A DNA stretch of 64,000 nucleotides from Haplodiscus bocki (GCA_965655095.1 OZ296651.1:108562001-108626000); one strand, 5' to 3'; counted from the stretch's first letter, positions 11,741 to 57,805 are shown. The notes: a model not told the origin generated them from the sequence alone. Numbers and translations: made by a program.

Positions 11741-11779
11741 ATGCAGCTGATAAGTAAGAGTTGACTTTAGAAAAATGAT

Positions 11780-18290: not shown

Positions 18291-18920
18291 CAAATTGCAG
18301 TACAATTACATTCTGCGTCAAAGGTATAGAACATTTTGAAAAAGTTATTGACAAAATGTCATGGGGAAACTACTTCGTTTTCCAAGGCGATGTCAAACCA
18401 TCTTGGCTCTGCCCCCTCTCGATTGCAGACCAGAGATCCCTCATTTACGCGTTGAGGATTGCAAAATCCCGACATCTATCGTTACCTGTGGAAAATTTTG
18501 CATGCATCCGCAGGTAATTTTTTCTGAGGAGCAATTTACCTGAGCCCATCGCTAGTAATTTCCCATGTGCCACTCTTACTTCCATTGTTTTCAAAACGAA
18601 AAACTTCACGAGAGGTAGAATGGGACACTGGTTCCAATTTTCGTTCACATATCGCTCAAATATACCAGCTAAATGCGGAAAGCGTGAACTCTGAGTTGTG
18701 AGTAAATCTTCTAAAATAGTTCCTGAAAAGGAAAACTGCCAACATGCCGCCTGTCGTTATATGCCTGACTTTTTCGTGACGACCGCTGGGAATTAGGCAG
18801 TCAATCAGACACATTGTATGATAGCTGTGCTTTTCAGGTAAAATTGTTAGGTTCATTAACAAAAAAAGTACCTTGCGCAAAATTTTGAGAGAAACATTGT
18901 GGCTTTCCATGCTGATTTTG

Positions 18921-19690: not shown

Positions 19691-19883
19691 CGCATGAGAC
19701 TTTGAAAAAACGTTTAGCTCGCAAATAATCAAGTCTCAAAAAAATACGCGAATGATTACATGAGTCACATGACGTTCAGCGCCTGATGTTATACTTACTG
19801 GAATCTGACGACGACCAACTTAGATGGAACACCTGAGACGAGTGAGCAAAAGCTTAACACTTTTAAAATTGATAGAGCACAAT

Positions 19884-19950
19884 AGTAGTTAGGAAAACGA
19901 CTGGCCTTTCAACGGGGGGGGGGGGGTTCTTGTTTCAAAATCGGAGGACC
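19884..19950 (+). repeat. Left TIR
   Basis: AGTAGTTAGGAAAACGACTGGCCTTTCAAC(G)13TTCTTGTTTCAAAATCGGAGGACC versus the reverse complement of the right end, AGTAGTAAGAAAAACAGCCGGCTTTTCAAC(G)5TCCTTGTTTCAAAATTTTAGGACC. Confidence 0.9.
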
Positions 19951-20009
19951 TCTTTAGGGGTCCTCTAATTTTGAAGCAAGGACCCACCTCCATTGAAAGG
20001 CCGGCCGTT
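19895..20009. repeat. ~115-bp imperfect palindrome (fold-back of the left TIR)
   Basis: AACGACTGGCCTTTCAA...TTCTTGTTTCAAAAT.GGAGGACCTC-TTTA-GGGGTCCTC.AATTTTGAAGCAAGGA...TTGAAAGGCCGGCCGTT. Confidence 0.9.
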
Positions 20010-20201
20010 CAATTTTCTTATGACCCCTCCCTAAAACGACAGTCCGGTGAAATTCGGACCGGTAATGTCGAGTGCCGCTCGGGCTTCGGAAATATTAACA
20101 GATGGTCTGCATCTCGTGATTGCAAGTCGTCCGGTTGATTTAATTCGTCGGATCACACTCGTGTCGCGCGACGCACAACATAAAGTTAATTCGAGAACAC
20201 G

Positions 20202-20588
20202 GTGGACTCCAAAACAATGGAACCAAACGAAATAGACGTAAACAAAGTGCAACAAATTTTCCATCGATTTTCTAATGATAAAACTGACGATTTTGATGTC
20301 TACAGAAAATATGTTTTGAGCTTTTGTTTGAATTACCTGAGAAATACTACTCTTAACGTAACACTAAAACAACTCCAAAGCTTGCTGAAAGAAGAGCCAC
20401 AAATCGAATGTGGATTGTTTTATAAGCATTGTAAATTTTACAGAGTACTTGTGATTGTTTCTAACGCTCAAACTGTACTTGGAATTTTCTGTGACACAGA
20501 AGACTGTTTGGATACGAGAAATAGGTTCAAAAGATTTTGGTCAGCTTTAATTCATCCTCTCTGGAGTATTTTGAGTTTGAAATTATAA
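20202..20588 (+). CDS. 128-aa hypothetical protein of the element (also 27612-27998, 35040-35426, 42460-42846)
   Basis: Open in all four units and first ORF after the TIR; no recognisable motif. Confidence 0.4.
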   Translation: MDSKTMEPNEIDVNKVQQIFHRFSNDKTDDFDVYRKYVLSFCLNYLRNTTLNVTLKQLQSLLKEEPQIECGLFYKHCKFYRVLVIVSNAQTVLGIFCDTEDCLDTRNRFKRFWSALIHPLWSILSLKL

Positions 20589-20617
20589 CTCCAAGCGCAC
20601 CGGTTTAATCAGTTGGA

Positions 20618-21144
20618 ATGTTGAACGAATACGGAAACATTGTTTTTGATTTTGAGAATGTTACTTATAACATTTTTTTGAGAGAGAATTGACTGTTTAT
20701 GGAAAAAGTTTCCAAGACACGCTGCTTTTCAAACCACCGAAAGAACTGCTTGACTGTTCAACCACACATCAACGCTCGATAAATTTGCTTACAAAAAGAG
20801 TTGATCGTACGGACTGGAATAGTGGTTTTTACCCTTACAAGTTCATTAGCGAAGATTTTGTTTGCCCTCGAATTCGTTTTCCCAAATTGAGAGTTTTAGT
20901 TAAAGTAAAAAATAGAGTGGGTTTCCTTCACAAGCATTTGGAAAACGTTCGAGACTCCGTTGAACTTGCTTATCCACCAGGAAAAGAACTACGCAAAGAT
21001 TTTGTGATTTCGTGTTCTAATCACAACAAAATTGAACCCTGGAAACCCAACAATAAGTTTTGGCATTGAAGTAAAATAAAGTCGGCGTCCTTTTATCAGC
21101 AGATAGAAAAATCCAAATATGGAAGCACTGCCGGAAGCCAATAA
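20618..21144 (+). pseudogene. Putative DnaQ/DEDD-like exonuclease-fold protein of a Polinton-like element (repeated in each unit)
   Basis: Reconstructed across one frameshift and one stop: IVFDFE...FLRE/LTV...LLFKPP...W.SG.YPY...KG...FL...C..H...H(*)S. DxE resembles an ExoI motif. Family assignment is from recall of similar ORFs. Confidence 0.45.
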
Positions 21145-22767
21145 CATGTGCTAATGTTACTTCCTCATTTAAGCGTCTCCTTGTTACAAGCAGCAAACAA
21201 TAGTCATTTGGTCGTTTTGACCAAAGACGAGTATGTTGGAAATGGTTTTGACAGAGTTATGAGAAGAGATGTGATCCAATTGTTTCTCTCAGGGTACTAC
21301 TTACCAAAGTCTGCGTTTGGTGTTCTTGACGCCGGAATTTTGAATAACATGAGTCAGCAGAATCCGAGACCAGGCAGAAAAAGTTCTCCAATATGAAAAA
21401 AACCACCCTTCAACTTTCCCAACAAGAAATCCCCACGTCTGATAGAAATTCATGCAGGCTGTTATAATTTACCCAAAGAAATTAGGCGAATTACGAAAGG
21501 ATAGAAAGCGGATAAGATTTGCTTCTTCCCTGCAATCGGCAAGGAAACCTCAAAATTCAGGATTGAATTAAAAACTGAAGACACCGAAGGAACTCTTTCA
21601 TTACTTTGCATGACACGAAAGAGTTTAAATTACCTAGTAGTAGAAGTTTGTAGAATCAACCAACATGTGTATGACTTGTAGACTGATCATTTCTAAAACT
21701 ATTGGACCGTTTTCTTCTTTCTTTTGACACTTTTATTAGTATACCGTTCTTTAGACACTCAAAGACAAGATTTTTTTTTGTTCAAGTGTACTTCTGTACT
21801 CCTCAACATTGCCAAACCAGAAAAACTGTGTAAAGAGACACACGCTGAAAAGCATCCTTTTTTGTGCTTAGAAAAGCTGCATGCTTTTCTGCAATGCACT
21901 TTTGAAAACGAATCCTGATTGCTTTTAAAAGGATTCTTTTTTTTTAAATTGAATTTCTCTTCATGTAATTGTTTTGAGTAAAGTGCTCAGAGCCAGTGGA
22001 CGTTGCAGATCTAATACCCATTCATAAACTGGTTTATGATGAGAACATTGTAGAGATACCCCCTGGGAAGTTTTGCAACTCTACCACGAAGCATTTTTGA
22101 AGTTCGAGTTCGAAGAGATTTTTTCATAGTATCAAAATTCAAAAAAGTTTACCGGAAAAAGGACCATCTTTGAAAAAAAATTTGATCGTTTTAGCCAAAA
22201 AAACAAACATTTCTCTACCTTGAAGAAAAATACCGAGCCAACAGTTGGCACACCAACAGAAAAAAAGACGTTGAATCCGCTAATGAAAACCGCGGGACGC
22301 CAGCTTCAAAGTGTGTTGAGAGTTTGGTCAAAGAATGCGTATTTCGAAAACGGGTACTCTGACAAAAGCTGTCAATTTTCTCAACAACTGTTGGTCGGAT
22401 CGGTCTAAAAAGTTGCATGCAGGTCCGCGAGGCAGTTTTGGAAAAACTAAATTGGAACAAAGGGGGCCCTTCAAAGTCACCTTCCTTCAAAAATTGCAAA
22501 AATCAACTTCCATTACGACTCGCAGTATAAAGTCAAACCGTCAACAAACAGAGATTAAAATAGTTTGAGGACTCTTGGTTTGCGACCAGCCGCCGTTTCC
22601 CAAAAAAGCGTCAAGGATACCATATAAGGTGATCGGATCAGAATTCAAAGAACACCAGAGTCCCTCCATCCTCATACCATAAATGATTGTCGTCTCGTCA
22701 ATTTATCGGAGCGCAGAAAGAATTTATGATCGCAATCTTAACTTTCAGAAGCACTCGACTTGTCAAA

Positions 22768-25700
22768 ATGGCTGCGGAGTGTGATGTTTGCTTCAAAACA
22801 AAGAGCTTTCCGACAAAGTTGCGCCAACACAAGCAAAAATTACACAAAGTACTTCCGAAAACTTTTTTTTTGATGTTGGGACTGTGACTATGAAAATACC
22901 TCGTTGGTTTTCATGAAGAAACACTTTTTACTAAACCATGCATTTATAATAGTCAATCATTGTTGTTTCTGTAACCTCATTTATGGAGATGGCGCCAAAG
23001 TTTCGAATCATGCCGAAAGCGTCCACTCTTTACCAACAAAATTCACACAGAGTCAAGGCGGACATTGAAAGAATCACCGGTTACCTAACAAACAGAAACA
23101 GCATTCACAGGATCATTACAAGTGTATCAACTGAAGTGAAGAATTACATCAGTTGATTTCTTAGAGTTGTTGGTCAGGAGAAATAATCATATACAAACCT
23201 GAATTAGAAAAAAAGCTCGAGGTGGTTTCAAGAAATTCAAAAACCCACAGAAGTGAAACTAGTGAAACCGGAACCTGACCAAACCTCACAAGAAACTATT
23301 ACAACACACACAAGCACTGACCGTGTACCAATTTGGTTTTCTAAAATCTCAGATGACGTTTTTTATCGTTTGATCGAGCAACTGACATTGGCTTTGTGTA
23401 CCTTTGCATCGCATGATAGTCGATGGATTTTGTGGGAAATAATAAACTTAATAGTAAAATTTATATCATTTTCAGCAGATTAGGGCTGATCCTACATCGC
23501 TTGTCTCATCAATCTTCGTAATTGTGAGTCTCTAATCAAAAATCGCAACGTTGCCGACAAAAACTGCTTTTTCTATTGTCATACTGTTGGATACCATCTA
23601 TACACGGAGGAGTTTCTCATCGACATAAGTTCTTTGCGATGCAAAACAAGCCCCGATATCTATAATCCCATTATCAACCCGTTAACCAAAAAGCATCTGG
23701 GTGAGTTGTCAAGGCCAATGCCATTCAATCAAATTAGTTGCTATGAAAAAGTCAACGAGGTTCAAGTAATTATCTGCAGAATTAAAAAAAGATTTTGTGC
23801 CCTTGAGGGTCTCTTAAGTTCGATGTGATTTGATAATGGATTTATTACTGTTGTCAAACGATGGCTCTCATCACTATGTTTTGATTACCAATTTGAAACG
23901 TTTTGTCAAATTCATCAAAAAAGCAGAGTAGGTGGAGAGGTTATCTATGCCGAAACTGTTTCAATGTTTGCAATTCAGTTGAAAGTTTACAAAGTCACAA
24001 AATCCATTTTTACGAAAATGAAGCCGCGACAAAAGTTCTGCCCGATCATAAGAAAAAACTTCATTAATTAAAAAGTACAAAAACCACTTGAATTGTACTT
24101 CTCGTTATTTTTTTCGCCACCGAAGCCCTTCTCATTCCTATCCATACATGTGACTCCTTACCAAACGCCATTGAGCAAACGAAATTGGAAAAAAAATCCC
24201 TCTGGCTATGGATTCAATTTTGTTGAGCATGGAAAAGACATAGTTTTGTTCAAGAGAGTCAAAAGAGAACACAACTTTCGAAGATTTTATCAAAGAGTTG
24301 GAAAAAAACGAAGGATATTTCTAACCGTATACAATGTTTCTGATTCTGCAGAAGTAACCCTCCAGTACCAGAAGAATCTGTCGGTGACTGCTGGATTCGC
24401 ATTAAACCTTTCGAAATAGACCAGGGAGAATTATTGGACCATTGTCATTATAGTGGTAAGTTCTTAGGTTAGGCTCATTATCAATGTAATCTGAAGAGAA
24501 AATCAATCAACTTCACCCCAGTGGTTGCCCACAACATCGCAGGCTATGACATTTATCAAATATGAACAATAATCAAGAAGAGCAATTCAAACAACAAGTT
24601 CTCTGTGATTCCCACAACAAATGAGAAGTGCATTTCTTTCACATTTTCCGTATGGGTAAACTTTTTTTTATGGAAAAAAAAGGAGTGATGAAAAATGTTT
24701 ATGAAGAAATGCAATTCTTGGATTCTTTCATTTCAATACCACAGTACCTAGAGAACCTAGCTCAAAGAAAAATTTATATACCTCGACTGTCAATTCAATA
24801 TGCAAAAAACAGTATCACAATTTGACTTACTGAAAAGGAAAGGAGTTTACCTCTACACATACATGAACATTTTCGACAAATAAGTTCTAGAAAAAAAATA
24901 CTTCCAAAACGGTTTTGGAAACACACACTTTAAGTTGGAGTAATTACTGTTTCCGACGGAGACTGGGAGCATGCAAATCTTGTATTCCAAGAGTTTGATT
25001 GCAAAACTTTAGTCGACTAACATGATTTTTATTTACACAAAGATGTTCTCTTTCTAGCGTCCCTCTTTGAAGTGTCTCGCTAAGTCTGCTATGCCATTTA
25101 CGGTCTGGACTGTGTACATTTCTATTTGGTATCCAATTTGTCTGCTGAAGCCTTCCTCAGAAACTGTAACGGTGGAATTGAACTTTTAAGCGATCGAGAA
25201 CTTTTGGAAATGGCCGAAAACTTGATTCGCGGAGGATTTTCTCGAATGTTTGGAAAACGTAATTTTGAAGCAAATAACAAAATTTTACCAAACCATAACC
25301 CCTCAGTGAAACAGAAATTTGGTTTTTTCATTGATGCAAACAACTTATACGGCGGAATCGTGGAAAACTTTCCTTTACCTTTAAAAAACTTTGTTTTGAG
25401 AACAGAAGGAAAACTTGACCTGCATGGAAGTCTAAGTACGACAGATGACCCCTCAGTTGGATAATTTTTGCAGGCGAATGTTCATTTTCTCGAGCCTTTG
25501 GACGATTTTCACCCATATTTCCCATTGGCATCAACCAAAGAGGAAAAATTTATTTCCGGCTCGAAGAATATCAGAAGAACACGCTGAAATTGTTTGAAAC
25601 AAAAAGATTTTCCACAAAAAAGTAAAAAAAAACGGATTCAAAAAGTTTAGGACGAAACCAATATTTATACCTTGAAATAGCCTACTTTGAATTTATATTT

Positions 25701-26897
25701 TGAACTGGGATTAGAAGTCAAAGAAACTGACGAAGTGTTACATTTCAATGCACCAAAAAAGCTCAAGCCTTACATGCAACTGAACACTGCAAAACGGAAA
25801 GCCTCGGCAACAAATTTGAGGAGAATTTCTACAAGTTGATGAATTTTTCGGCATTCGGAAAAACGATGAAAAGTAAAGCAAAAGGATTGGTTGTTGAGAT
25901 AGTTACTACAAGGACCCAGTTGCTCGCGCAAACGAAGAAGAAGTGGATGAAAACACACGAGACTTAGGATTGTTTTCGCTGCTAAGACATTCAAACCACT
26001 GAAATTCTACCAAAAAAACCTACGATAGTTGGTGCCACAAAATTGGATATGCCAAATCGACACATGTATTGGTTCCACTATAAACATACGAAAGCAAATG
26101 TCAAAATCCTAGCTTTTTATTCCGACACAGATTCTCTGATTTACGAGATTGAGTCGGAAGATTTGTACAAAGACCTCAAAAACAATGATGCAATTTAACA
26201 AGAGTATGAGTTCTCGAATCATAACGAAGGCATTGGGCGGCACTCTAAACATCAAAACCTAGAAACACTCGAGTTTCCAGATGAATTAGGTGGGAAAACC
26301 ATACACAGTATCCTTGCTATGAAAACAAAACTATTTTAAATTTCAATGGGAGATAAACAGAAACTCTCTGCAGAAGGAACCACCAAAAAAGCGCAGAAAA
26401 GTCTGAAGCACCCAGTTTTCTTTCGAATTCTTGCAATAGATGCTTTACTCAGATTTTTGAATTATACAAAAAACTGTCAAAAACATACTGTATTTACCTT
26501 ACAAACCAAAAAAATGTCGTTGAGCTGTTTCGATGATAAACAATATGTTCTGCTGAACGGCGTAGGCGCTTTGCCTTTCGGACACTACTCCTTGCGAGAA
26601 GATGCAATGTTCCGGGATGTTTGCGGGGACATTGAATGGGGGAATGATGTATTGAGAGAGAAAAGGCAGAAAGATGACGAGGATCTTCACCCTAATGAAG
26701 CAAACGATTCGGAACTACCGATATTTTCACCTCCTCATCGCGAACTTTTACAAAATCCAATCACCGTTGACAATTTTTTTGATTTAATCGATCTTTTAGA
26801 ATCTTCAGATACTGAATTCGATCCACCAAGTACAGAACCGAATTTATTTTTGGACATGGAAGCCTCAGAAGTCTTTTCGAATTGTCCTCCTCCCTGA
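22768..26897 (+). pseudogene. polB: Protein-primed family-B DNA polymerase (pPolB), unit 1
   Basis: Motifs in the expected order across stops and frameshifts: N-terminal CxxC..H..H fingers; HYVLI; LCRNCF; DHCHYSGKFLG*AHYQCNL; HNIAGYD (ExoII); FLDSF; RKGVY.Y; YL..DV (ExoIII); IRGG; DANNLYG (motif A); YKLMNFSAFGKT (motif B); YSDTDS (motif C); SLSCFDDK; PFGHY. Confidence 0.93.
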
Positions 26898-27430
26898 ATA
26901 AGAGTCACATTTAACAGCTTTTAATTTTATACAGTGTTTTTCAACAAAAATATGTTTGTGGAGTAATTCAGCGTTTAATTCCGTATTTTGAAAAGACAAA
27001 ATAGCTGGTTCTGTTTTTAGTTGGAATTCCAAGGTGTAATTGCTAAGTTAGAGCTTTCAGTTTCTTAAAACTGAACCACCAGAATTTTTATTGTACACGA
27101 AAGTAAGGGAACGCCTAATGAAAGCATTTCTTGAGTGGAGCAATTTTTGTAAGTATTTTTAAAAGCACTACCACCGCCACTACAGATCAGCGAAGTCTAA
27201 TTAGCATTCCTGTTACCAACTAGCAATTTGGGAATGTTTTATCAATAACGTTGGGATTGCTTGAAAGTATTAGTTAATCCACCACAATTTTACAATTGAC
27301 TTCTACTACAACAAAGTCTCAGGGTTAGTTCGTACCAAACTTACAGACATTCAAATAGAACCGAGAATGTATATGCTTTTACGTCTAGTTTCAAAAACTT
27401 AAACTTCTTCCTTTTATGGATACGTCCTAA

Positions 27431-30400
27431 TGACCACTTCCTAAAACGACAGTCCTGTGAAATGCGGACCAGTAATGTCGAGTGCCGCTCGCGCTTCGGA
27501 AATCTTAACAGATGGTCTGCATCTCGTGATTGCAAGTCGTCCGGTTGATTTAATTCGTCGGATCACACTCGTGTCGCGCGACGCACAACATAAAGTTAAT
27601 TCGAGAACACGGTGGACTCCAAAACAATGGAACCAAACGAAATAGACGTAAACAAAGTGCAACAAAGTTTCCATCGATTTTCTAATGATAAAACTGACGA
27701 TTTTGATGTCTACAGAAAATATGTTTTGAGCTTTTGTTTGAATTACCTGAGAAATACTACTCTTAACGTAACACTAAAACAACTCCAAAGCTTGTTGAAA
27801 GAAGAGCCACAAATCGAATGTGGATTGTTTTATAAGCATTGTAAATTTTACAGACTACTTGTGATTGTTTCTAACGCTCAAACTGTACTTGGAATTTTCT
27901 GTGACACAGAAGACTGTTTGGATACGAGAAATAGGTTCAAAAGATTTTGGTCAGCTTTAATTCATCCTCTCTGGAGTATTTTGAGTTTGAAATTATAACT
28001 CCAAGCGCACCGGTTTAATCAGTTGGAATGTTGAACGAATACGGAAACATTGTTTTTGATTTTGAGAATGTTACTTATAACATTTTTTTGAGAGAGAATT
28101 GACTGTTTATGGAAAAAGTTTCCAAGACACGCTGCTTTTCAAACCACCGAAAGAACTGCTTGACTGTTCAACCACACATCAACGCTCGATAAATTTGCTT
28201 ACAAAAAGAGTTGATCGTACGGACTGGAATAGTGGTTTTTACCCTTACAAGTTCATTAGCGAAGATTTTGTTTGCCCTCGAATTCGTTTTCCCAAATTGA
28301 GAGTTTTAGTTAAAGGAAAAAATAGAGTGGGTTTCCTTCACAAGCATTTGGAAAACGTTCGAGACTCCGTTGAACTTGCTTATCCACCAGGAAAAGAACT
28401 ACGCAAAGATTTTGTGATTTCGTGTTCTAATCACAACAAAATTGAACCCTGGAAACCCAACAATAAGTTTTGGCATTGAAGTAAAATAAAGTCGGCGTCC
28501 TTTTATCAGCAGATAGAAAAATCCAAATATGGAAGCACAGCCGGAAGCCAATAACATGTGTCTAATGTTACTTCCTCATTTAAGCGTCTCCTTGTTACAA
28601 GCAGCAAACAATAGTCATTTGGTCGTTTTGACCAAAGACGAGTATGTTGGAAATGGTTTTGACAGAGTTATGAGAAGAGATGTGATCCAATTGTTTCTCT
28701 CAGGGTACTACTTACCAAAGTCTGCGTTTGGTGTTCTTGACGCCGGAATTTTGAATAACATGAGTCAGCAGAATCCGAGACCAGGCAGAAAAAGTTCTCC
28801 AATATGAAAAAAACCACCCTTCAACTTTCCCAACAAGAAATCCCCACGTCTGATAGAAATTCATGCAGGCTGTTATAATTTACCCAAAGAAATTAGGCGA
28901 ATTACGAAAGGATAGAAAGCGGATAAGATTTGCTTCTTCCCTGCAATCGGCAAGGAAACCTCAAAATTCAGGATTGAATTAAAAACTGAAGACACCGAAG
29001 GAACTCTTTCATTACTTTGCATGACACGAAAGAGTTTAAATTACCTAGTAGTAGAAGTTTGTAGAATCAATCAACATGTGTATGACTTGTAGACTGATCA
29101 TTTCTAAAACTATTGGACCGTTTTCTTCTTTCTTTTGACACTTTTATTAGTATACCGTTCTTTAGACACTCAAAGACAAGATTTTTTTTTGTTCAAGTGT
29201 ACTTCTATACTCCTCAACATTGCCAAACTAGAAAAACTGTGTAAAGAGACACACGCGGAAAAGCATCCATTTTTGTGCTCAGAAAAGCTGCATGCTTTTC
29301 TGCAATGCTTTTTTGGAAACGAATCCTGATTGCTTTTAAAACGATACTCTTTGTTTTTAAAAAATTGAATTTCTCTTCATGTATTTGTTTTGCGTAAAGT
29401 GCTCAGAGCCAGTGGACGTTGCAGATCTAATACCCATTCATAAACTGGTTTATGATGAGAACATTGTAGAGAGACCCCCTGGGAAGTTTTGCAACTCTAC
29501 CACGAAGCATTTTTGAAGTTCGAGTTTGAAGAGACTTTTTCATAGTATCAAAATTCAAAAAAGTTTACCGGAAAAAGGACCATCTTTGAAAAAAAATTTG
29601 ATCGTTTTAGCCAAAAAAACAAACATTTCTCTACCTTGAAGAAAAATACCGAGCCGACAGTTGGCACACCAACAGAAAAAAAGACGTTGAAGCCGCTAAT
29701 GAAAACCGCGGGACGCCAGCTTCAAAGTGTGTTGAGAGTTTGGTCAAAGAATGCGTATTTCGAAAACGGGTACTCCGACAAAAGCTGTCAATTTTCTCAA
29801 CAACTGTTGGTCGGATCGGTCTAAAAAGTTGCATGCAGGTCCGCGAGGCAGTTTTGGAAAAACTAAATTGGAACAAAGGGGGCCCTTCAAAGTCACCTTC
29901 CTTCAAAAATTGCAAAAATCAACTTCCATTACGACTCGCAGTATAAAGTCAAACCGTCAACAAACAGAGATTAAAATAGTTTGAGGACTCTTGGTTTGCG
30001 ACCAGCCGCCGTTTTCCAAAAAAAGCGTCAAGGATACCATATAAGGTGATCGGATCAGAATTCAAAGAACACCAGAGTCCCTCCACCCTCATACCATAAA
30101 TGATTGTCGTCTCGTCAATTTATAGGAGCGCAGAAAAAATTTATGATCGCAATCTTAACTTTCAGAAGCACTCGACTTGTCAAAATGGCTGCGGAGTGTG
30201 ATGTTTGCTTCAAAACATAGAGCTTTCCGACAAAGTTGCGCCAACACAAGCAAAAATTACACGAAGTACTTCCGAAAATTTTTTTTTGATGTTCGGACTG
30301 TGACTATGAAAATACCTCGTTGGTTTTCATGAAGAAACACTTTTTACTAAACCATGGATTTATAATAGTCAATCATTGTTGTTTCTGTAACATCATTTAT

Positions 30401-33400: not shown

Positions 33401-34858
33401 AAGACATTCAAACCACTGAAATTCTACCAAAAAAACCTACGATAGTTGGTGCCACAAAATTGGATATGCCAAATCGACACATGTATTGGTTCCACTATAA
33501 ACATACGAAAGCAAATGTCAAAATCCTAGCTTTTTATTCCGACACAGATTCTCTGATTTACGAGATTGAGTCGGAAGATTTGTACAAGGACCTCAAAAAC
33601 AATGATGCAATTTAACAAGAGTATGAGTTCTCGAATCATAACGAAGGCATTGGGCGGCACTCTAAACATCAAAACCTAGAAACACTCGAGTTTCCAGATG
33701 AATTAGGTGGGAAAACCATACACAGTATCCTTGCTATGAAAACAAAACTATTTTAAATTTCAATGGGAGATAAACAGAAACTCTCTGCAGAAGGAACCAC
33801 CAAAAAAGCGCAGAAAAGTCTGAAGCACCCAGTTTTCTTTCGAATTCTTGCAATAGATGCTTTACTCAGATTTTTGAATTATACAAAAAACTGTCAAAAA
33901 CATACTGTATTTACCTTACAAACCAAAAAAATGTCGTTGAGCTGTTTCGATGATAAACAATATGTTCTGCTGAACGGCGTAGGCGCTTTGCCTTTCGGAC
34001 ACTACTCCTTGCGAGAAGATGCAATGTTCCGGGATGTTTGCGGGGACATTGAATGGGGGAATGATGTATTGAGAGAGAAAAGGCAGAAAGATGACGAGGA
34101 TCTTCACCCTAATGAAGCAAACGATTCGGAACTACCGATATTTTCACCTCCTCATCGCGAACTTTTACAAAATCCAATCACCGTTGACAATTTTTTTGAT
34201 TTAATCGATCTTTTAGAATCTTCAGATACTGAATTCGATCCACCAAGTACAGAACCGAATTTATTTTTGGACATGGAAGCCTCAGAAGTCTTTTCGAATT
34301 GTCCTCCTCCCTGAATAAGAGTCACATTTAACAGCTTTTAACTTTATACAGTGTTTTTCAACAAAAATATGTTTGTGGAGTAATTCAGCGTTTAATTCCG
34401 TGTTTTGAAAAGACAAAATAGCTGGTTCTGTTTTTAGTTGGAATTCCAAGGTGTAATTGCTAAGTTAGAGCTTTCAGTTTCTTAAAACTGAACCACCAGA
34501 ATTTTTATTGTACACGAAAGTAAGGGAACGCCTAATGAAAGCATTTCTTGAGTGGAGCAATTTTTGTAAGTATTTTTAAAAGCACTACCACCGCCACTAC
34601 AGATCAGTGAAGTCTAATTAGCATTCCTGTTACCAACTAGCAATTTGGGAATGTTTTATCAATAACGTTGGGATTGCTTGAAAGTATTAGTTAATCCACC
34701 ACAATTTTACAATTGACTTCTACTACAACAAAGTCTCAGGGTTAGTTCGTACCAAACTTACAGACATTCAAATAGAACCGAGAATGTATATGCTTTTACG
34801 TCTAGTTTCAAAAACTTAAACTTCTTCCTTTTATGGATGCGTCCTAAAATCTTTCTTA
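27431..34858 (+). repeat. Tandem unit 2 (7428 bp)
   Basis: Near-identical to unit 1. Confidence 0.97.
30185..34314 (+). pseudogene. polB: pPolB pseudogene, unit 2
   Basis: Same motifs and essentially the same lesions as unit 1. Confidence 0.93.
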
Positions 34859-40800: not shown

Positions 40801-42278
40801 TTAGGATTGTTTTCGCTGCTAAGACATTCAAACCACTGAAATTCTACCAAAAAAACCTACGATAGTTGGTGCCACAAAATTGGATATGCCAAATCGACAC
40901 ATGTATTGGTTCCACTATAAACATACGAAAGCAAATGTCAAAATCCTAGCTTTTTATTCCGACACAGATTCTCTGATTTACGAGATTGAGTCGGAAGATT
41001 TGTACAAAGACCTCAAAAACGATGATGCAATTTAACAAGAGTATGAGTTCTCGAATCATAACGAAGGCATTGGGCGGCACTCTAAACATCAAAACCTAGA
41101 AACACTCGAGTTTCCAGATGAATTAGGTGGGAAAACCATACACAGTATCCTTGCTATGAAAACAAAACTATTTTATATTTCAATGGGAGATAAACAGAAA
41201 CTCTCTGCAGAAGGAACCACCAAAAAAGCGCAGAAAAGTCTGAAGCACCCAGTTTTCTTTCGAATTCTTGCAATAGATGCTTTACTCAGATTTTTGAATT
41301 ATACAAAAAACTGTCAAAAACATACTGTATTTACCTTACAAACCAAAAAAATGTCGTTGAGCTGTTTCGATGATAAACAATATGTTCTGCTGAACGGCGT
41401 AGGCGCTTTGCCTTTCGGACACTACTCCTTGCGAGAAGATGCAATGTTCCGGGATGTTTGCGGGGACATTGAATGGGGGAATGATGTATTGAGAGAGAAA
41501 AGGAAGAAAGATGACGAGGATCTTCACCCTAATGAAGCAAACGATTCGGAACTACCGATATTTTCACCTCCTCATCGCGAAGTTTTACAAAATCCAATCA
41601 CTGTTGACAATTTTTTTGATTTAATCGATCTTTTAGAATCTTCAGATACTGAATTCGATCCACCAAGTACAGAACCGAATTTATTTTTGGACATGGAAGC
41701 CTCAGAAGTCTTTTCGAATTGTCCTCCTCCCTGAATAAGAGTCACATTTAACAGCTTTTAATTTTATACAGTGTTTTTCAACAAAAATATGTTTGTGGAG
41801 TAATTCAGCGTTTAATTCCGTGTTTTGAAAAGACAAAATAGCTGGTTCTGTTTTTAGTTGGAATTCCAAGGTGTAATTGCTAAGTTAGAGCTTTCAGTTT
41901 CTTAAAACTGAACCACCAGAATTTTTATTGTACACGAAAGTAAGGGAACGCCTAATGAAAGCATTTCTTGAGTGGAGCAATTTTTGTAAGTATTTTTAAA
42001 AGCACTACCACCGCCACTACAGATCAGTGAAGTCTAATTAGCATTCCTGTTACCAACTAGCAATTTGGGAATGTTTTATCAATAACGTTGGGATTGCTTG
42101 AAAGTATTAGTTAATCCACCACAATTTTACAATTGACTTCTACTACAACAAAGTCTCAGGGTTAGTTCGTACCAAACTTACAGACATTCAAATAGAACCG
42201 AGAATGTATATGCTTTTACGTCTAGTTTCAAAAACTTAAACTTCTTCCTTTTATGGATGCGTCCTAAAATCTTTCTTA
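34859..42278 (+). repeat. Tandem unit 3 (7420 bp)
   Basis: Near-identical to units 1 and 2. Confidence 0.97.
37608..41734 (+). pseudogene. polB: pPolB pseudogene, unit 3
   Basis: Same motifs. One stop shared by units 1 and 2 (TTTTAA) is TTTTAT here, which lengthens the ORF to 41156-41734. Confidence 0.93.
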
Positions 42279-45200
42279 TGACCACTTCCTAAAACGACAG
42301 TCCTGTGAAATGCGGACCAGTAATGTCGAGTGCCGCTCGGGCTTCGGAAATCTTAACAGATGGTCTGCATCTCGTGATTGCAAGTCGTCCGGTTGATTTA
42401 ATTCGTCGGATCATACTCGTGTCGCGCGACGCACAACATAAAGTTAATTCGAGAACACGGTGGACTACAAAACAATGGAACCAAACGAAATAGACGTAAA
42501 CAAAGTGCAACAAATTTTCCATCGATTTTCTAATGATAAAACTGACGATTTTGATGTCTACAGAAAATATGTTTTGAGCTTTTGTTTGAATTACCTGAGA
42601 AATACTACTCTTAACGTAACACTAAAACAACTCCAAAGCTTGTTGAAAGAAGAGCCACAAATCGAATGTGGATTGTTTTATAAGCATTGTAAATTTTACA
42701 GACTACTTGTGATTGTTTCTAACGCTCAAACTGTACTTGGAATTTTCTGTGACACAGAAGACTGTTTGGATACGAGAAATAGGTTCAAAAGATTTTGGTC
42801 AGCTTTAATTCATCCTCTCTGGAGTATTTTGAGTTTGAAATTATAACTCCAAGCGCACCGGTTTAATCAGTTGGAATGTTGAACGAATACGGAAACATTG
42901 TTTTTGATTTTGAGAATGTTACTTATAACATTTTTTTGAGAGAGAATTGACTGTTTATGGAAAAAGTTTCCAAGACACGCTGCTTTTCAAACCACCGAAA
43001 GAACTGCTTGACTGTTCAACCACACATCAACGCTCGATAAATTTGCTTACAAAAAGAGTTGATCGTACGGACTGGAATAGTGGTTTTTACCATTACAAGT
43101 TCATTAGCGAAGATTTTGTTTGCCCTCGAATTCGTTTTCCCAAATTGAGAGTTTTAGTTAAAGGAAAAAATAGAGTGGATTTCCTTCACAAGCATTTGGA
43201 AAACGTTCGAGACTCCGTTGAACTTGCTTATCCACCAGGAAAAGAACTACGCAAAGATTTTGTGATTTCGTGTTCTAATCACAACAAAATTGAACCCTGG
43301 AAACCCAACAATAAGTTTTGGCATTGAAGTAAAATAAAGTCGGCGTCCTTTTATCAGCAGATAGAAAAATCCAAATATGGAAGCACTGCCGGAAGCCAAT
43401 AACATGTGCTAATGTTACTTCCTCATTTAAGCGTCTCCTTGTTACAAGCAGCAAACAATAGTCATTTGGTCGTTTTGACCAAAGACGAGTATGTTGGAAA
43501 TGGTTTTGACAGAGTTATGAGAAGAGATGTGATCCAATTGTTTCTCTCAGGGTACTACTTACCAAAGTCTGCGTTTGGTGTTCTTGACGCCGGAATTTTG
43601 AATAACATGAGTCAGCAGAATCCGAGACCAGGCAGAAAAAGTTCTCCAATATGAAAAAAACCACCCTTCAACTTTCCCAACAAGAAATCCCCACGTCCGA
43701 TAGAAATTCATGCAGGCTGTTATAATTTACCCAAAGAAATTAGGCGAATTACGAAAGGATAGAAAGCGGATAAGATTTGCTTCTTCCCTGCAATCGGCAA
43801 GGAAACCTCAAAATTCAGGATTGAATTAAAAACTGAAGACACCGAAGGAACTCTTTCATTACTTTGCATGACACGAAAGAGTTTAAATTACCTAGTAGTA
43901 GAAGTTTGTAGAATCAACCAACATGTGTATGACTTGTAGACTGATCATTTCTAAAACTATTGGACCGTTTTCTTCTTTCTTTTGACACTTTTATTAGTAT
44001 ACCGTTCTTTAGACACTCAAAGACAAGATTTTTTTTTGTTCAAGTGTACTTCTATACTCCTCAACATTGCCAAACTAGAAAAACTGTGTAAAGAGACACA
44101 CGCGGAAAAGCATCCATTTTTGTGCTCAGATTGCTTTTAAAACGATACTCTTAGTTTTTAAAAAATTGAATTTCTCTTCATGTATTTGTTTTGAGTAAAG
44201 TGCTCAGAGCCAGTGGACGTTGCAGATCTAATACCCATTCATAAACTGGTTTATGATGAGAACATTGTAGAGAGACCCCCTGGGAAGTTTTGCAACTCTA
44301 CCACGAAGCATTTTTGAAGTTCGAGTTTGAAGAGACTTTTTCATAGTATCAAAATTCAAAAAAGTTTACCGGAAAAAGGACCATCTTTGAAAAAAAATTT
44401 GATCGTTTTAGCCAAATAAACAAACATTTCTCTACCTTGAAGAAAAATACCGAGCCAACAGTTGGCACACCAACAGAAAAAAAGACGTTGAATCCGCTAA
44501 TGAAAACCGCGGGACGCCAGCTTCAAAGTGTGTTGAGAGTTTGGTCAAAGAATGCGTATTTCGAAAACGGGTACTCTGACAAAAGCTGTCAATTTTCTCA
44601 ACAACTGTTGGTCGGATCGGTCTAAAAAGTTGCATGCAGGTCCGCGAGGCAGTTTTGGAAAAACTAAATTGGAACAAAGGGGGCCCTTCAAAGTCACCTT
44701 CCTTCAAAAATTGCAAAAATCAACTTCCATTACGACTCGCAGTATAAAGTCAAACCGTCAACAAACAGAGATTAAAATAGTTTGAGGACTCTTGGTTTGC
44801 GACCAGCCGCCGTTTTCCAAAAAAAGCGTCAAGGATACCATATAAGGTGATCGGATCAGAATTCAAAGAACACCAGAGTCCCTCCACCCTCATACCATAA
44901 ATGATTGTCGTCTCGTCAATTTATAGGAGCGCAGAAAAAATTTATGATCGCAATCTTAACTTTCAGAAGCACTCGACTTGTCAAAATGGCTGCGGAGTGT
45001 GATGTTTGCTTCAAAACATAGAGCTTTCCGACAAAGTTGCGCCAACACAAGCAAAAATTACACGAAGTACTTCCGAAAATTTTTTTTGATGTTCGGACTG
45101 TGACTATGAAAATACCTCGTTGGTTTTCATGAAGAAACACTTTTTACTAAACCATGGATTTATAATAGTCAATCATTGTTGTTTCTGTAACATCATTTAT

Positions 45201-48200
45201 GGAGATGGCGCCAAAGTTTCGAATCATGCCGAAAGCGTCCACTCTTTACCAACAAAATTCACACAGAGTCAAGGCGGACATTGAAAGAATCACCGGTTAC
45301 CTAACAAACAGAAACAGCATTCACAGGATCATTACAAGTGTATCAACTGAAGTGAAGAATTACATCAGTTGATTTCTTAGAGTTGTTGGTCAGGAGAAAT
45401 AATCATATACAAACCTGAATTAGAAAAAAAGCTCGAGATGGTTTCAAGAAATTCAAAAACCCACAGAAGTGAAACTAGTGAAACCGGAACCTGACCAAAC
45501 CTCACAAGAAACTATTACAACACACACAAGCACTGACCGTGTACCAATTTGGTTTTCTAAAATCTCAGATGACGTTTTTTATCGTTTGATCGAGCAACTG
45601 ACATTGGCTTTGTGTACCTTTGCATCGCATGATAGTCGATGGATTTTGTGGGAAATAATAAACTTAATAATAAAATTTATATCATTTTCAGCAGATTAGG
45701 GCTGATCCTACATCGCTTGTCTCATCAATCTTCGTAATTGTGAGTCTCTAATCAAAAATCGCAACGTTGCCGACAAAAACTGCTTTTTCTATTGTCATAC
45801 TGTTGGATACCATCTATACACGGAGGAGTTTCTCATCGACATAAGTTCTTTGCGATGCAAAACAAGCCCCGATATCAAAAATCCCAGTATCAACCCGTTA
45901 ACCAAAAAGCATCTGGGTGAGTTGTCAAGGCCAATGCCATTCAATCAAATTAGTTGCTATGAAAAAGTCAACGAGGTTCAAGTAATTATCTGCAGAATTA
46001 TAAAAAGATTTTGTGCCCTTGAGGTTCTCTTAACTTCGATGTGATTTGATAATGGATTTATTACTGTTGTCAAACGATGGCCCTCATCACTATGTTTTGA
46101 TTACCAATTTGAAACGTTTTGTCAAATTCATCAAAAAAGCAGAGTAGGTGGAGAGGTTAACTATGCAGAAACTGTTTCAATGTTTGTAATTCAGTTGAAA
46201 GTTTACAAAGTCACAAAATCATTTTTTACGAAAATGAAGCCGCGAAAATAGTTCTGCCCGATCATTAGAAAAAACTTCATTAATTAAAAAGTACAAAAAG
46301 CACTTGATTTGTACTTCTCGTTTTTTTTGTCACCGAAGCGCTTCTCGTTCCTATCCATACATGTGACTCCTTACCAAATGCCATTGGGCAAACGATATTG
46401 GAAAAAAATAATCCCTCTGGCTATGGATTCAATTTTGTTGAGCATGGAAAAGACATAGTTTTGTTCAACAGAGTCAAAAGAGAACACAACTTTCGAAGAT
46501 TTTATCAAAGAGTTGGAAAAAAACGAAGGATATTTCTAACCGTATACAACGTTTCTGATTCTGCAGAAGTAACCCTCCAGTACCAGAAGAATCTGTCGGT
46601 GACTGCTGGATTCGCATTAAACCTTTCGAAATAGACCAGGGAGAATTATTGGACCATTGTCATTATAGTGGTAAGTTCTTAGGTTAGGCTCATTATCAAT
46701 GTAATCTGAAGAGAAAATCAATCAACTTCACCCCAGTGGTTGCCCACAACATCGCAGGCTATGACATTTATCAAATATGAACAATAATCAAGAAGAGCAA
46801 TTCAAACAACAAGTTCTCTGTGATTCCCACAACAAATGAGAAGTGCATTTCTTTCACATTTTCCGTATGGGTAAACTTTTTTTTATGGAAAAAAAGGAGT
46901 GATGAAAAATGTTTATGAAGAAATGCAATTCTTGGATTCTTTCATTTCAATACCACAGTCCCTGGAGAACCTAGCTCAAAGAAAAATTTATATACCTCGA
47001 CTGTCAATTCAATATGCAAAAAACAGTATCACAATTTGACTTACTGAAAAGGAAAGGAGTTTACCTCTACACATACATGAACATTTTCGACAAATAAGTT
47101 CTAGAAAAAAAATACTTCCAAAACGGTTTTGGAAACACACACTTTAAGTTGGAGTAATTACTGTTTCCGACGGAGACTTGGAGCATGCAAATCTTGTATT
47201 CCGAGAGTTTGATTGCAAAACTTTAGTCGACTAACATGATTTTTATTTACACAAAGATGTTCTCTTTCTAGCGTCCCTCTTTGAAGTGTCTCGCTAAGTC
47301 TGCTATGCCAATTACGGTCTGGACTGTGTACATTTCTATTTGGTATCCAATTTGTCTGCTGAAGCCTTCCTCAGAAACTTTAACGGTGGAATTGAACTTT
47401 TAAGCAATCGAGAACTTTTGGAAAAGGCCGAAAACTTGATTCGCGGAGGATTTTCTCGAATGTTTGGAAAACGTAATTTTGAAGCAAATAGCAAAATTTT
47501 ACCAACCCATAACCCCTCAGTGAAACAGACATTTGGTTTTTTCATTGATGCAAACAACTTATACGGCGGAATCGTGGAAAACTTTCCTTTACCTTTAAAA
47601 AACTTTGTTTTGAGAACAGAAAGAAAACTTGACCTGCATGGAAGTCTAAGTACGACAGATGACCCCTCAGTTGGATAATTTTTGCAGGCGAATCTTCATT
47701 TTCTCGAGCCTTTGGACGATTCTCACCCATATTTCCCATTGGCATCAACCAAAGAGGAAAAATTTATTTCCGGCTCGAAGAATATCAGAAGAACACGCTG
47801 AAATTGTTTGAAACAAAAAGATTTTCCACAAAAAAGTAAAAAAAAACGGATTCAAAAAGTTTAGGACGAAACCAATGTTTATACCTTGAAATAGCCTACT
47901 TTGAATTTATATTTTGAACTGGGATTAGAAGTCAAAGAAACTGACGAAGTGTTACATTTCAATGCACCAAAAAAGCTCAAGCCTTACATGCAACTGAACA
48001 CTGCAAAACGGAAAGCCTCGGCAACAAATTTGAGGAGAATTTCTACAAGTTGATGAATTTTTCGGCATTCGGAAAAACGATGAAAAGTAAAGCAAAAGGA
48101 TTGGTTGTTGAGATAGTTACTACAAGGACCCAGTTGCTCGCGCAAACGAAGAAGAAGTGGATGAAAACACACGAGACTTAGGATTGTTTTCGCTGCTAAG

Positions 48201-49348
48201 ACATTCAAACCACTGAAATTCTACCAAAAAAACCTACGATAGTTGGTGCCACAAAATTGGATATGCCAAATCGACACATGTATTGGTTCCACTATAAACA
48301 TACGAAAGCAAATGTCAAAATCCTAGCTTTTTATTCCGACACAGATTCTCTGATTTACGAGATTGAGTCGGAAGATTTGTACAAAGACCTCAAAAACAAT
48401 GATGCAATTTAACAAGAGTATGAGTTCTCGAATCATAACGAAGGCATTGGGCGGCACTCTAAACATCAAAACCTAGAAACACTCGAGTTTCCAGATGAAT
48501 TAGGTGGGAAAACCATACACAGTATCCTTGCTATGAAAACAAAACTATTTGAAAACAAAAGATGTATTGAGAGAGAAAAGGAAGAAAGATGACGAGGATC
48601 TTCAACCTAATGAAACAAACGATTCGGAACTACCGATATTTTCACCTCCTCATCGCGAACTTTTACAAAATCCAATCACCGTTGACAATTTTTTTGATTT
48701 AATCGATCTTTTAGAATCTTCAGATACTGAATTCGATCCACCAAGTACAGAACCGAATTTATTTTTGGACATGGAAGCCTCAGAAGTCTTTTCGAATTGT
48801 CCTCCTCCCTGAATAAGAGTCACATTTAACAGCTTTTAATTTTATACAGTGTTTTTCAACAAAAATATGTTTGTGGAGTAATTCAGCGTTTAATTCCGTG
48901 TTTTGAAAAGACAAAATAGCTGGTTCTGTTTTTAGTTGGAATTCCAAGGTGTAATTGCTAAGTTAGAGCTTTCAGTTTCTTAAAACTGAACCACCAGAAT
49001 TTTTATTGTACACGAAAGTAAGGGAACGCCTAATGAAAGCATTTCTTGAGTGGAGCAATTTTTGTAAGTATTTTTAAAAGCACTACCACCGCCACTACAG
49101 ATTAGCGAAGTCTAATTAGCATTCCTGTTACCAACTAGCAATTTGGGAATGTTTTATCAATAACGTTGGGATTGCTTGAAAGTATTAGTTAATCCACCAC
49201 AATTTCACAATTGACTTCTACTACAACAGAGTCTCAGGGTTAGTTCGTACCAAACTTACAGACATTCAAATAGAACCGAGAATGTATATGCTTTTACATC
49301 TAGTTTCAAAAACTTAAACTTCTTCCTCTTATGGATGGGTCCTAAAAT
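42279..49348 (+). repeat. Tandem unit 4 (~7.07 kb, two internal deletions)
   Basis: Deletions of ~46 bp at ~44130 and ~309 bp at ~48550 relative to the other units. Confidence 0.97.
44986..48812 (+). pseudogene. polB: pPolB pseudogene, unit 4 (C-terminal deletion)
   Basis: Motifs A, B and C present; the SLSCFDDK/PFGHY segment is deleted. Confidence 0.93.
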
Positions 49349-49396
49349 TTTGAAACAAGGACCCCCGTTGAAAAGCCGGCTGTTTTTCTTACTACT
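49338..49396 (-). repeat. Right TIR
   Basis: GGTCCTAAAATTTTGAAACAAGGACCCCCGTTGAAAAGCCGGCTGTTTTTCTTACTACT, followed by TSD CACAAT. Confidence 0.9.
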
Positions 49397-57796: not shown

Positions 57797-57805
57797 TTAT
57801 TTATA

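What the first reader, a model, noticed from the sequence alone, without database searches (positions are those of the whole stretch)
19884..49396. One pair of Polinton ends enclosing a 4x head-to-tail array of a 7.4-kb polymerase module
Seen: a single AGTAGT/ACTACT TIR pair and a single CACAAT TSD enclose four near-identical units, and no intact TIR or TSD lies at the internal junctions. Established: AGT-repeat termini, 6-bp TSDs and pPolB define Polintons/Mavericks, which normally integrate as monomers. Inference: a viral-type element whose whole body has become a macrosatellite inside its own ends. The alternative is a concatemeric defective genome that integrated in one event. This is the best candidate for an undescribed system in the window.
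Basis: partly seen in the sequence, partly recalled or inferred. Interest (0 to 1): 0.9.

Follow-up and report, generated by a model that had tools for sequence, protein, structure and literature searches.

The report
Dead Maverick remnant amplified into tandem array
A long-dead, cut-down copy of a Maverick/Polinton virus-like transposon had its interior copied four times head-to-tail by ordinary recombination inside its original ends, so it is a tidy genomic fossil and not a new biological system.

Summary
One pair of Maverick-type ends (AGTAGT...ACTACT, TIR about 60 bp) and one CACAAT duplication flank 19884-49396. A diverged paralogue of the insertion site at about 12046-12050 in the same window is unoccupied. 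Inside lie four head-to-tail units of about 7.42 kb, 98.4-99.4% identical. No left TIR or target-site duplication occurs at the three internal junctions.

The "polymerase module" is a wreck. Each unit carries a protein-primed family B polymerase remnant of about 4.1 kb that uses all three frames and has about 30 in-frame stops. At least 21-30 of these stops are shared by all four units. No integrase, ATPase, protease or capsid gene is detectable. The monomer (about 7.5 kb) is therefore an internal-deletion derivative.

Both breakpoints of the duplicated segment lie in TIR-derived repeats: the left end is a 130-bp palindrome whose inner arm is a direct copy of the right TIR. Variants private to unit 1 cluster in the first 5 kb and those private to unit 4 in the last 2.4 kb (p = 1.3e-7). 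That polarity is what unequal exchange on a diverged dimer predicts.

Best reading: in situ tandem duplication and stepwise unequal crossing-over of a fossil, as in the Drosophila Bari1 and hobo arrays. Interest is low to moderate.

The parts
19878..19883 (.). Left copy of the 6-bp target-site duplication (CACAAT)
   Evidence: Read directly. An identical hexamer lies at 49397-49402. The paralogous unoccupied site at about 12046-12050 has one related short stretch where the two flanks meet.
19884..19950 (+). Left terminal inverted repeat, starting AGTAGT
   Evidence: Aligns to the reverse complement of 49338-49396 with 49/59 identities plus one 8-nt gap. Score 49 against a shuffle maximum of 28.
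19958..20020 (+). Inner arm of the left-end palindrome. It is an inverted copy of the left TIR and therefore a direct copy of the right TIR (called R-TIR* here). The left breakpoint of the duplicated segment lies at its inner end.
   Evidence: Direct alignment to 49337-49391. Inverted-repeat pairs I1 and I2. 19884-20030 folds as a single-stranded DNA hairpin at -37.3 kcal/mol, z = -6.5.
20011..27426 (+). Unit 1 of the array (7416 bp). Outlier in its first 5 kb; interpreted as the 'A' unit of the original dimer.
27427..34847 (+). Unit 2 (7421 bp), a hybrid inner unit
34848..42267 (+). Unit 3 (7420 bp), a hybrid inner unit and the closest to unit 2 (0.62% divergence)
42268..49351 (+). Unit 4 (7084 bp; private deletions total about 345 bp). 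Outlier in its last 2.4 kb; interpreted as the 'B' unit. It runs into the right TIR.
27423..27435 (+). Junction of units 1 and 2: start of the right-TIR sequence fused to the end of R-TIR*, with a further 11-bp loss
34839..34863 (+). Junction of units 2 and 3: about 12 nt of the inner right TIR, one extra base, then the last 12 nt of R-TIR*. No left TIR and no TSD.
42259..42283 (+). Junction of units 3 and 4, identical in structure to junction 2/3
22780..26897 (+). Protein-primed family B DNA polymerase pseudogene, copy in unit 1 (one broken gene, outer bounds only)
   Evidence: tblastn of full-length relatives, which are Pfam DNA_pol_B_2: all three frames used, at least 4 frame changes, about 26 stops against P0016. 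Bounds mapped from unit 2.
30197..34314 (+). pPolB pseudogene, copy in unit 2
   Evidence: The 126-aa open stretch used as query gave 1110 relatives at E <= 1e-3.
37620..41734 (+). pPolB pseudogene, copy in unit 3
44998..48812 (+). pPolB pseudogene, copy in unit 4. It also carries a private deletion of about 300 bp.
20190..21393 (+). Remnant of a conserved but unidentified gene in the accessory region upstream of the polymerase, unit 1. The same remnant lies at 27600-28804, 35028-36232 and 42448-43651.
   Evidence: Relatives P0164-P0168 at 53-67% identity, E down to 1.7e-51. P0166 spans both open stretches. No Pfam, PDB or NCBIfam family. The AlphaFold model was unusable, pLDDT 32.
49338..49396 (-). 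Right terminal inverted repeat, ending ACTACT
49397..49402 (.). Right copy of the target-site duplication (CACAAT)
11870..12768 (+). Diverged paralogue of the insertion site without the element (unoccupied state)
   Evidence: The left flank matches 11870-12046 and the right flank matches 12050-12768, compared separately.

Best explanation
The region is a fossil. A roughly 7.5-kb internal-deletion derivative of a Maverick/Polinton inserted once into a host repeat and made a 6-bp duplication. It consisted of the left TIR, an accessory region, the pPolB gene and the right TIR, and lacked integrase and the capsid module.

The element was dead or decayed: its polymerase accumulated about 30 stops and several frameshifts. 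Much later its interior was tandemly duplicated. The two breakpoints lie 127 bp inside the left end and about 50 bp inside the right end. Both fall in TIR-derived sequence, namely the right TIR and its direct copy R-TIR*, which forms the inner arm of a 130-bp palindrome at the left end.

The duplication therefore arose either by exchange or slippage between these two roughly 65-bp direct repeats followed by a small junction deletion, or by a microhomology-mediated template switch provoked by the palindrome. The resulting dimer A-B diverged by about 1-1.5%. Out-of-register exchange between B on one chromatid and A on the other then created B5'/A3' hybrid inner units, taking the array to three and then four units.

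The array has no detectable function and evolves neutrally.

Shown here: single insertion, dead gene before amplification, identical TIR-deleted junctions, mosaic polarity.
Inferred: the order 'insertion, then decay, then duplication', and the exact molecular route of the first duplication.
For: 1. Single insertion: one TIR pair, one TSD and an unoccupied paralogous site.
2. Maverick identity of the ends: the (AGT)2//(ACT)2 motif, 6-bp TSD and a TIR length within the published 46-1447 bp range (PMC8097293).
3. pPolB: the open stretch 32502-32879 finds 1110 relatives. Full-length relatives of 1100-1290 aa carry Pfam PF03175 DNA_pol_B_2 at E 1e-11 to 1e-17, and the matched part lies inside that domain.
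4. Death before amplification: against five references, 23-35 distinct stop positions were found, of which 21-30 are present in all four units. All three stop codons are used and they align to varied residues, so this is not a variant genetic code.
5. Relative age: TIR mismatch is 10/59 against at most 1.3% divergence between units (binomial p = 5e-9).
6. Junctions: all three share the same fusion of the inner right TIR to the end of R-TIR*, with no left TIR or TSD.
7. Mosaic with the predicted polarity: 50 of 55 U1-private sites lie in the first 5 kb and 18 of 27 U4-private sites lie in the last 2.4 kb (Fisher p = 1.3e-7). In the first 5 kb U1 is the outlier (1.4-1.6% against 0.7-0.8%). In the last 2.4 kb U4 is the outlier (1.1-1.4% against 0.3-0.7%).
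8. Neutrality: 24 nonsynonymous and 5 synonymous variants among units in the five longest open stretches.
9. No recent sister copies: the nearest protein to the C-terminal polymerase ORF outside this contig is 56% identical overall (up to 66% in shorter partial matches); for the upstream ORF it is 66%.
10. Precedent: the Bari1 and hobo arrays (PMC5932611).
Against: - Concerted evolution could keep an old array homogeneous, so shared stops alone do not date the first duplication.
- TIRs need not have been identical at insertion, and 59 bp is a small sample.
- The junction is not a clean full-length hybrid of the two direct repeats. About 45 bp are missing and one base is extra, so a second step or a non-homologous route must be assumed.
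- There is no outgroup copy to polarise the variants.
- Unit number rests on one assembly. The only public record found is the same contig.
- The origin of the left-end palindrome is unexplained.
Confidence: 0.72

Rival explanations
1. Double insertion: a second copy of the same dead, non-autonomous element inserted at or next to the end of the first. The palindromic right-TIR/left-TIR junction was then deleted and the dimer expanded by unequal exchange. This is the route favoured for many Drosophila DNA-transposon dimers.
For: Junction deletions that remove TIRs are common in hobo dimers and are proposed for Bari1 (PMC5932611). A head-to-tail junction of this element would be a long palindrome next to R-TIR* and therefore prone to deletion. 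Later growth by unequal exchange fits equally well.
Against: Both copies would have to carry the same 21-30 or more stops, which implies recent mobilisation of a dead copy in trans. Yet no other close copy is seen in the protein collection that includes this assembly. No trace of a TSD or left TIR remains at any junction. TIR divergence suggests the insertion is far older than the units' split.
Confidence: 0.09
2. Circle-mediated amplification: recombination between R-TIR* and the right TIR released a 7.4-kb circle. The circle was copied by rolling-circle synthesis and recombined back into the resident copy.
For: The two direct repeats that bound the body are the substrate such an excision needs. 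The product would have exactly the observed layout with identical junctions.
Against: One such event gives identical inner units with no complementary outlier pattern. The staggered divergences (1.4-1.6%, 0.7-0.8%, 0.3%) need several events spread over time, which unequal exchange explains without circles. There is no direct evidence of circles.
Confidence: 0.07
3. One reading: a concatemeric defective genome was formed before integration and inserted in one event.
For: One TIR pair and one TSD enclose all units.
Against: Protein-primed replication (established for this polymerase family) yields unit-length linear molecules and not head-to-tail concatemers. The polymerase was already riddled with stops when the units separated. 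TIRs are about 17% mismatched while units differ by at most 1.3%. Private variants are not spread evenly among and along units as a one-step origin predicts (Fisher p = 1.3e-7).
Confidence: 0.05
4. Assembly artefact: the true locus has fewer or more units and the assembler mis-resolved the repeat.
For: The array (29.5 kb) is longer than typical accurate long reads. The only public record with this sequence is the same contig, so there is no independent confirmation.
Against: The four units are all distinct: 46-96 substitutions per pair and private indels. They also form a coherent recombinational mosaic, which a collapsed or looped assembly would not produce.
Confidence: 0.05

Closest known systems
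Maverick/Polinton elements with the (AGT)2//(ACT)2 end motif (Kapitonov and Jurka 2006, as cited in PMC8097293; gene set in PMC4028283)
   Same: Identical end motif, a perfect 6-bp TSD, a TIR length within the reported range, and a pPolB gene pointing inward behind an accessory region at one end. Some relatives of the polymerase also carry an Endonuclease VII/HNH-type nuclease domain, as described for some Polinton polymerases (PMC10748475).
   Different: The monomer is only about 7.5 kb against a reported 12.7-24.6 kb. No integrase, ATPase, protease or capsid genes are detectable. The polymerase is a pseudogene. The left end carries an extra inverted copy of the TIR. The interior is present four times.
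Bari1 and hobo tandem arrays of Drosophila melanogaster (PMC5932611)
   Same: A cut-and-paste type DNA element present as a head-to-tail array. All junctions carry the same deletion of TIR sequence and, for Bari1, no TSD. Growth is attributed to unequal exchange from a dimer.
   Different: Those arrays consist of whole small transposons, and the outer boundaries are not one intact TIR/TSD pair enclosing the array. Here the breakpoints lie inside the element's own ends and the unit is a virus-like element remnant of 7.4 kb.
Tandem arrays of LTR retroelements formed by exchange between their direct terminal repeats (e.g. Cassandra, PMC7215508; Fig. 1A of PMC5932611)
   Same: Direct repeats bounding the body provide the substrate for out-of-register exchange, giving body-repeat-body arrays inside one pair of outer ends.
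   Different: Here the direct repeats are an accident of an extra inverted TIR copy and not a built-in feature of the family. The junction repeat is also partly deleted.
Tandemly integrated polintons and polinton-like viruses (bioRxiv 10.64898/2026.10.13.758929)
   Same: Polinton-type elements found side by side in host genomes.
   Different: Those are adjacent whole elements, often of different kinds, each with its own boundaries. Here there is a single insertion whose interior was amplified afterwards.

Membership tests
Maverick/Polinton | Conserved terminal motif, 5'-(AGT)2 ... (ACT)2-3' or 5'-(AG)3 ... (CT)3-3' | tested here: met
   AGTAGT at 19884-19889 and ACTACT at 49391-49396. Motif definition from PMC8097293.
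Maverick/Polinton | 6-bp target-site duplication | tested here: met
   CACAAT on both sides. The unoccupied paralogous site supports it.
Maverick/Polinton | Terminal inverted repeats (46-1447 bp in vertebrate elements) | tested here: met
   59-67 bp, 83% identity over aligned positions, well above shuffles.
Maverick/Polinton | Protein-primed family B DNA polymerase gene | tested here: met
   Present as a pseudogene in each unit. Its relatives carry Pfam DNA_pol_B_2. Pfam did not score the window's own fragments directly.
Maverick/Polinton | RVE-family integrase gene | tested here: not met
   None of about 45 open stretches of the unit, on either strand, matched a Pfam family. There is only about 0.5 kb between the polymerase and the right TIR. 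Short broken fragments could escape Pfam, as the polymerase fragments did.
Maverick/Polinton | Morphogenesis module (major and minor capsid proteins, adenovirus-type protease, FtsK-like ATPase) | tested here: not met
   No matches in the unit or in the flanks. The unit has no room for it.
Transposon-derived tandem array grown by unequal exchange | Head-to-tail units with identical junctions that lack TSDs | tested here: met
   Junction 1/2 differs only by a further 11-bp loss.
Transposon-derived tandem array grown by unequal exchange | Edge units diverge most, and inner units are hybrids with the 5' part of the last unit and the 3' part of the first | tested here: met
   (Fisher p = 1.3e-7).
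Transposon-derived tandem array grown by unequal exchange | Copy number polymorphic among individuals in steps of one unit | not testable with these tools
   Only one assembly holds the locus.

The most novel reading that the evidence does not exclude
The array is the footprint of an extrachromosomal phase of a defective pPolB element. A 7.4-kb circle, or a concatemer formed between the right TIR and its internal direct copy, was amplified and recombined back. That would make the left-end palindrome plus internal TIR copy a built-in device that lets Maverick derivatives multiply without integrase.
Probability: 0.06. Interest if true: 0.6.

Novelty: new member of a known kind. Interest (0 to 1): 0.25.

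Why it matters
The locus is a clean worked example of how a virus-like element remnant becomes a macrosatellite. The insertion, the death of the gene, the first duplication at TIR-derived repeats and the later unequal exchanges can each be read from one 30-kb stretch. It also warns against counting polymerase hits as separate Maverick insertions: four hits here are one insertion event. It does not reveal a new mobile-element strategy, and nothing in it appears functional.

Tried and rejected
- Pfam, PHROGs and NCBIfam scans of about 45 open stretches of the unit and 13 of the flanks gave no significant family. The window's own polymerase fragments were also missed. The polymerase was recognised only through relatives found by the exhaustive phmmer search.
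- PDB sequence searches with a fragment, with a full-length relative and with a 13-sequence profile did not return a solved protein-primed polymerase. Only the nuclease domain matched, to Hpy99I at E = 1e-4. The protein I had in mind was the phi29-type polymerase. It did not come back as a hit, so I claim no such likeness beyond the Pfam family.
- The AlphaFold model of the upstream conserved protein (P0165 with 9 rows) was unusable, pLDDT 32, so I ran no fold search.
- Variant genetic code as an explanation for the stops: rejected.
- Independent insertions at each junction: rejected.
- Rfam and tRNA scans of the window found nothing.
- Host identity: only an ENA analysis accession and contig name were obtained. 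The organism is not identified and nothing suggests human sequence.
- The look-up of the window's own ORF only returned the same contig, so it gave no independent check of unit number.

- The table printed by my script (self-comparison segment ends) incidentally brackets the private deletions of unit 4, one of which lies in the polymerase remnant.
- One search printed bounds of open stretches, which by nature end at stops.
None of this is repeated here. No remembered letters went into any tool, and nothing was deleted.
Full report
**What is there**

The window is about 37% G+C, with one 200-N run at 60837-61036, which I left alone. A self-comparison shows a head-to-tail array with a period of 7416-7421 bp between 20011 and 49351. 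Tandem Repeats Finder cannot see it because its longest period is 500.

In the register of the self-comparison the units are U1 20011-27426, U2 27427-34847, U3 34848-42267 and U4 42268-49351. A four-way alignment gives pairwise substitution divergence of 0.62% (U2-U3) to 1.33% (U1-U4). There are a few small indels. U4 has private deletions totalling about 345 bp.

**Ends and target site**

CACAAT|AGTAGT lies at 19878-19889 and ACTACT|CACAAT at 49391-49402. The left end aligns to the reverse complement of the right end over 59-67 bp, with 49 of 59 aligned positions identical and one 8-nt gap in a G run. The score is 49, against a maximum of 28 in 300 shuffles. A 12-mer from the TIR occurs only at these two places in the window.

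The two flanks, compared separately, match one continuous stretch 8 kb upstream. 19693-19871 matches 11870-12046 and 49406-50121 matches 12050-12768, at about 76-77% identity. That stretch is a diverged paralogue of the target in the unoccupied state. Everything between 19884 and 49396 is therefore a single insertion.

The end motif, the 6-bp duplication and the TIR length all match what is described for Mavericks. PMC8097293 reports (AGT)2//(ACT)2, 6-bp TSDs and TIRs of 46-1447 bp.

**Unusual left end and the junctions**

Immediately inside the left TIR lies its own inverted copy (19958-20020). This makes a palindrome of about 130 bp that folds as a single-stranded DNA hairpin at -37.3 kcal/mol, z = -6.5. 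Because it is inverted relative to the left TIR, this inner arm (R-TIR*) is a direct repeat of the right TIR. The monomer's body was therefore bounded by two direct repeats of about 65 bp.

The repeat register begins at the inner end of R-TIR* and stops about 50 bp before the right terminus. Each internal junction consists of about 12 nt of the inner part of the right TIR, one extra base, and the last 12 nt of R-TIR*. Junction 1/2 has lost 11 bp more. No left TIR and no CACAAT duplication occur at any junction.

**Coding content**

No ORF in the array exceeds 192 aa. Profile libraries did not recognise any fragment.

An exhaustive phmmer search with the 126-aa open stretch 32502-32879 found 1110 relatives at E <= 1e-3. 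These include full-length proteins of 1100-1290 aa. Most of the full-length relatives that were scanned carry Pfam PF03175 (DNA polymerase type B, organellar and viral) at E 1e-11 to 1e-17, over the part that the query matches. Some also carry an Endonuclease VII-type domain. A profile of 13 relatives also hits the HNH-type nuclease Hpy99I in the PDB. Polinton polymerases with an inserted HNH nuclease are described in PMC10748475.

tblastn of the relatives onto the units maps a polymerase remnant of about 4.1 kb in each unit. The outer bounds are 22780-26897, 30197-34314, 37620-41734 and 44998-48812. The remnant uses all three frames. Against the best reference it shows 4-7 frame changes and 16-29 stops inside the aligned segments. 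All three stop codons occur and they align to many different residues, so a variant genetic code is not the reason. U4 also has a private deletion of about 300 bp within the remnant.

Upstream of the polymerase, each unit carries about 1.2 kb of a conserved but unidentifiable gene (27600-28804 in U2). Its relatives are 53-67% identical. The window's copy is truncated relative to them at least once. No Pfam, PDB or NCBIfam family matched, and a structure model failed.

There is no sign of integrase, ATPase, protease or capsid genes in the unit or in the flanks. Only about 0.5 kb separates the polymerase from the right TIR. Against the published architecture (accessory region, ppolb, atp, pm, pz, then the opposite module ending in int), the monomer looks like the left 7 kb of a Maverick joined to a right TIR. 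That makes it an internal-deletion derivative of about 7.5 kb.

**When and how the array formed**

1. Of 23-35 distinct stop positions seen with five reference proteins, 21-30 are stops in all four units. The gene was thoroughly dead before the units separated.
2. The TIRs differ at 10 of 59 aligned positions, while the units differ by at most 1.3% (binomial p = 5e-9). If the TIRs were alike at insertion, as is usual for this family, the insertion is an order of magnitude older than the first duplication.
3. Variants among units in the five longest open stretches are 24 nonsynonymous to 5 synonymous, so there is no purifying selection.
4. In the 5.8-billion-protein collection, which contains this very contig, the nearest protein to the C-terminal polymerase ORF outside the contig is 56% identical (up to 66% in shorter partial matches). 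The nearest to the upstream ORF is 66% identical. The 99%-identical copies are therefore confined to this locus, which argues against a recent burst of transposition.
5. Private variants are not spread evenly. 50 of 55 U1-private sites fall in the first 5 kb of the unit and 18 of 27 U4-private sites fall in the last 2.4 kb (Fisher p = 1.3e-7). In the first 5 kb U1 is the outlier (1.4-1.6% against 0.7-0.8% among the rest). In the last 2.4 kb U4 is the outlier (1.1-1.4% against 0.3-0.7%).

The inner units thus have the 5' part of the last unit and the 3' part of the first. That is precisely the hybrid that the expanded product of an out-of-register exchange between the second unit of one chromatid and the first unit of the other must carry. 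The reciprocal polarity belongs to the contracted product. Fifteen sites shared by U2 and U3 alone, and a small patch where U3 resembles U1, indicate at least two further events.

**Proposed history**

1. One integration (shown).
2. Decay of the element, or insertion of an already dead copy (stops shown; order inferred).
3. A first tandem duplication with both breakpoints in TIR-derived sequence. It arose either by exchange between R-TIR* and the right TIR followed by loss of about 45 bp, or by a template switch at microhomology provoked by the palindrome (breakpoints shown; route inferred).
4. Divergence of the dimer by about 1-1.5%.
5. Two or more unequal exchanges giving four units (mosaic shown).

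**Rivals**

- A concatemer inserted in one event is disfavoured by points 1, 2 and 5 above. It is also disfavoured by the established fact that protein-primed replication produces unit-length linear genomes.
- A double insertion followed by deletion of the palindromic junction, as proposed for Drosophila transposon dimers (PMC5932611), remains possible. It requires recent mobilisation of a dead copy, of which no other trace is seen.
- A circle-mediated amplification between the two direct repeats would give the same layout but does not explain the staggered divergences.
- An assembly artefact is unlikely because the four units are distinct and form a coherent mosaic. Unit number nevertheless rests on one assembly: ENA ERZ26859043, contig ctg85858_38.27x_l, 197,399 bp.

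**Comparison with what is known**

By its ends, TSD and polymerase the element belongs with Mavericks/Polintons, as a gene-poor, dead derivative. It fails the integrase and capsid-module criteria in this copy.

As a structure it belongs with transposon-derived tandem arrays. The Bari1 arrays have identical TIR-deleted, TSD-less junctions, and a hobo dimer expanded to about 16 copies (PMC5932611). LTR elements form arrays by exchange between their direct repeats (PMC7215508). Polintons integrated side by side have been noted (bioRxiv 10.64898/2026.10.13.758929), but as whole adjacent elements. In the papers I searched I found no description of a Maverick interior amplified inside one pair of ends. 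The case is therefore a new member of a known kind and not a new system.

This means integrase linkage in relatives and the family-wide end structure were not examined.
- All protein queries were single open stretches or database proteins.

Noticed in passing
window 63387-63998 (-), runs off the window end: A 203-aa ORF belongs to a very high-copy family. It has 3824 relatives at E <= 1e-3, over a hundred of them 80-89% identical and on long ENA contigs. None has a Pfam domain or a name. It is presumably a gene of an abundant, recently active repeat of the host.
   Followed up: partly
window 9086-12768 versus 17904-19883 plus 49403-50121: The Maverick remnant sits inside one copy of a host repeat at least 3.5 kb long. 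A second copy, 70-77% identical, lies 8 kb upstream in the same orientation with different internal spacing. It is either an old local duplication or two copies of a dispersed repeat.
   Followed up: partly
window 19884-20030: The left end of the element is a hairpin-forming palindrome of about 130 bp (left TIR plus its own inverted copy), while the right end has no such partner. How it arose is unexplained.
   Followed up: partly
window 62242-62685: A minisatellite with nested periods of 54, 61, 115 and 136 bp, 77-95% matches.
   Followed up: no
window about 52000-61000: G+C drops to 28-31%, against 35-39% in the rest of the window. A 108-bp tandem repeat lies at 52247-52483.
   Followed up: no
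window 5401-5700 versus 10071-10368 (inverted); 10298-10752 versus 12781-13238: Further dispersed repeats at 76-81% identity in the left flank. The region appears to be repeat-rich and gene-poor: no Pfam family was found in the flank ORFs of 95 aa or more that were scanned.
   Followed up: no
window 60837-61036 and beyond: Mapping two ORFs to the public contig puts that contig's end at about window position 61408, a few hundred bases past the N run. The ORF beyond it is on record from a different contig of 67,599 bp. The window therefore seems to span a join between two contigs. I did not examine the N run.
   Followed up: no
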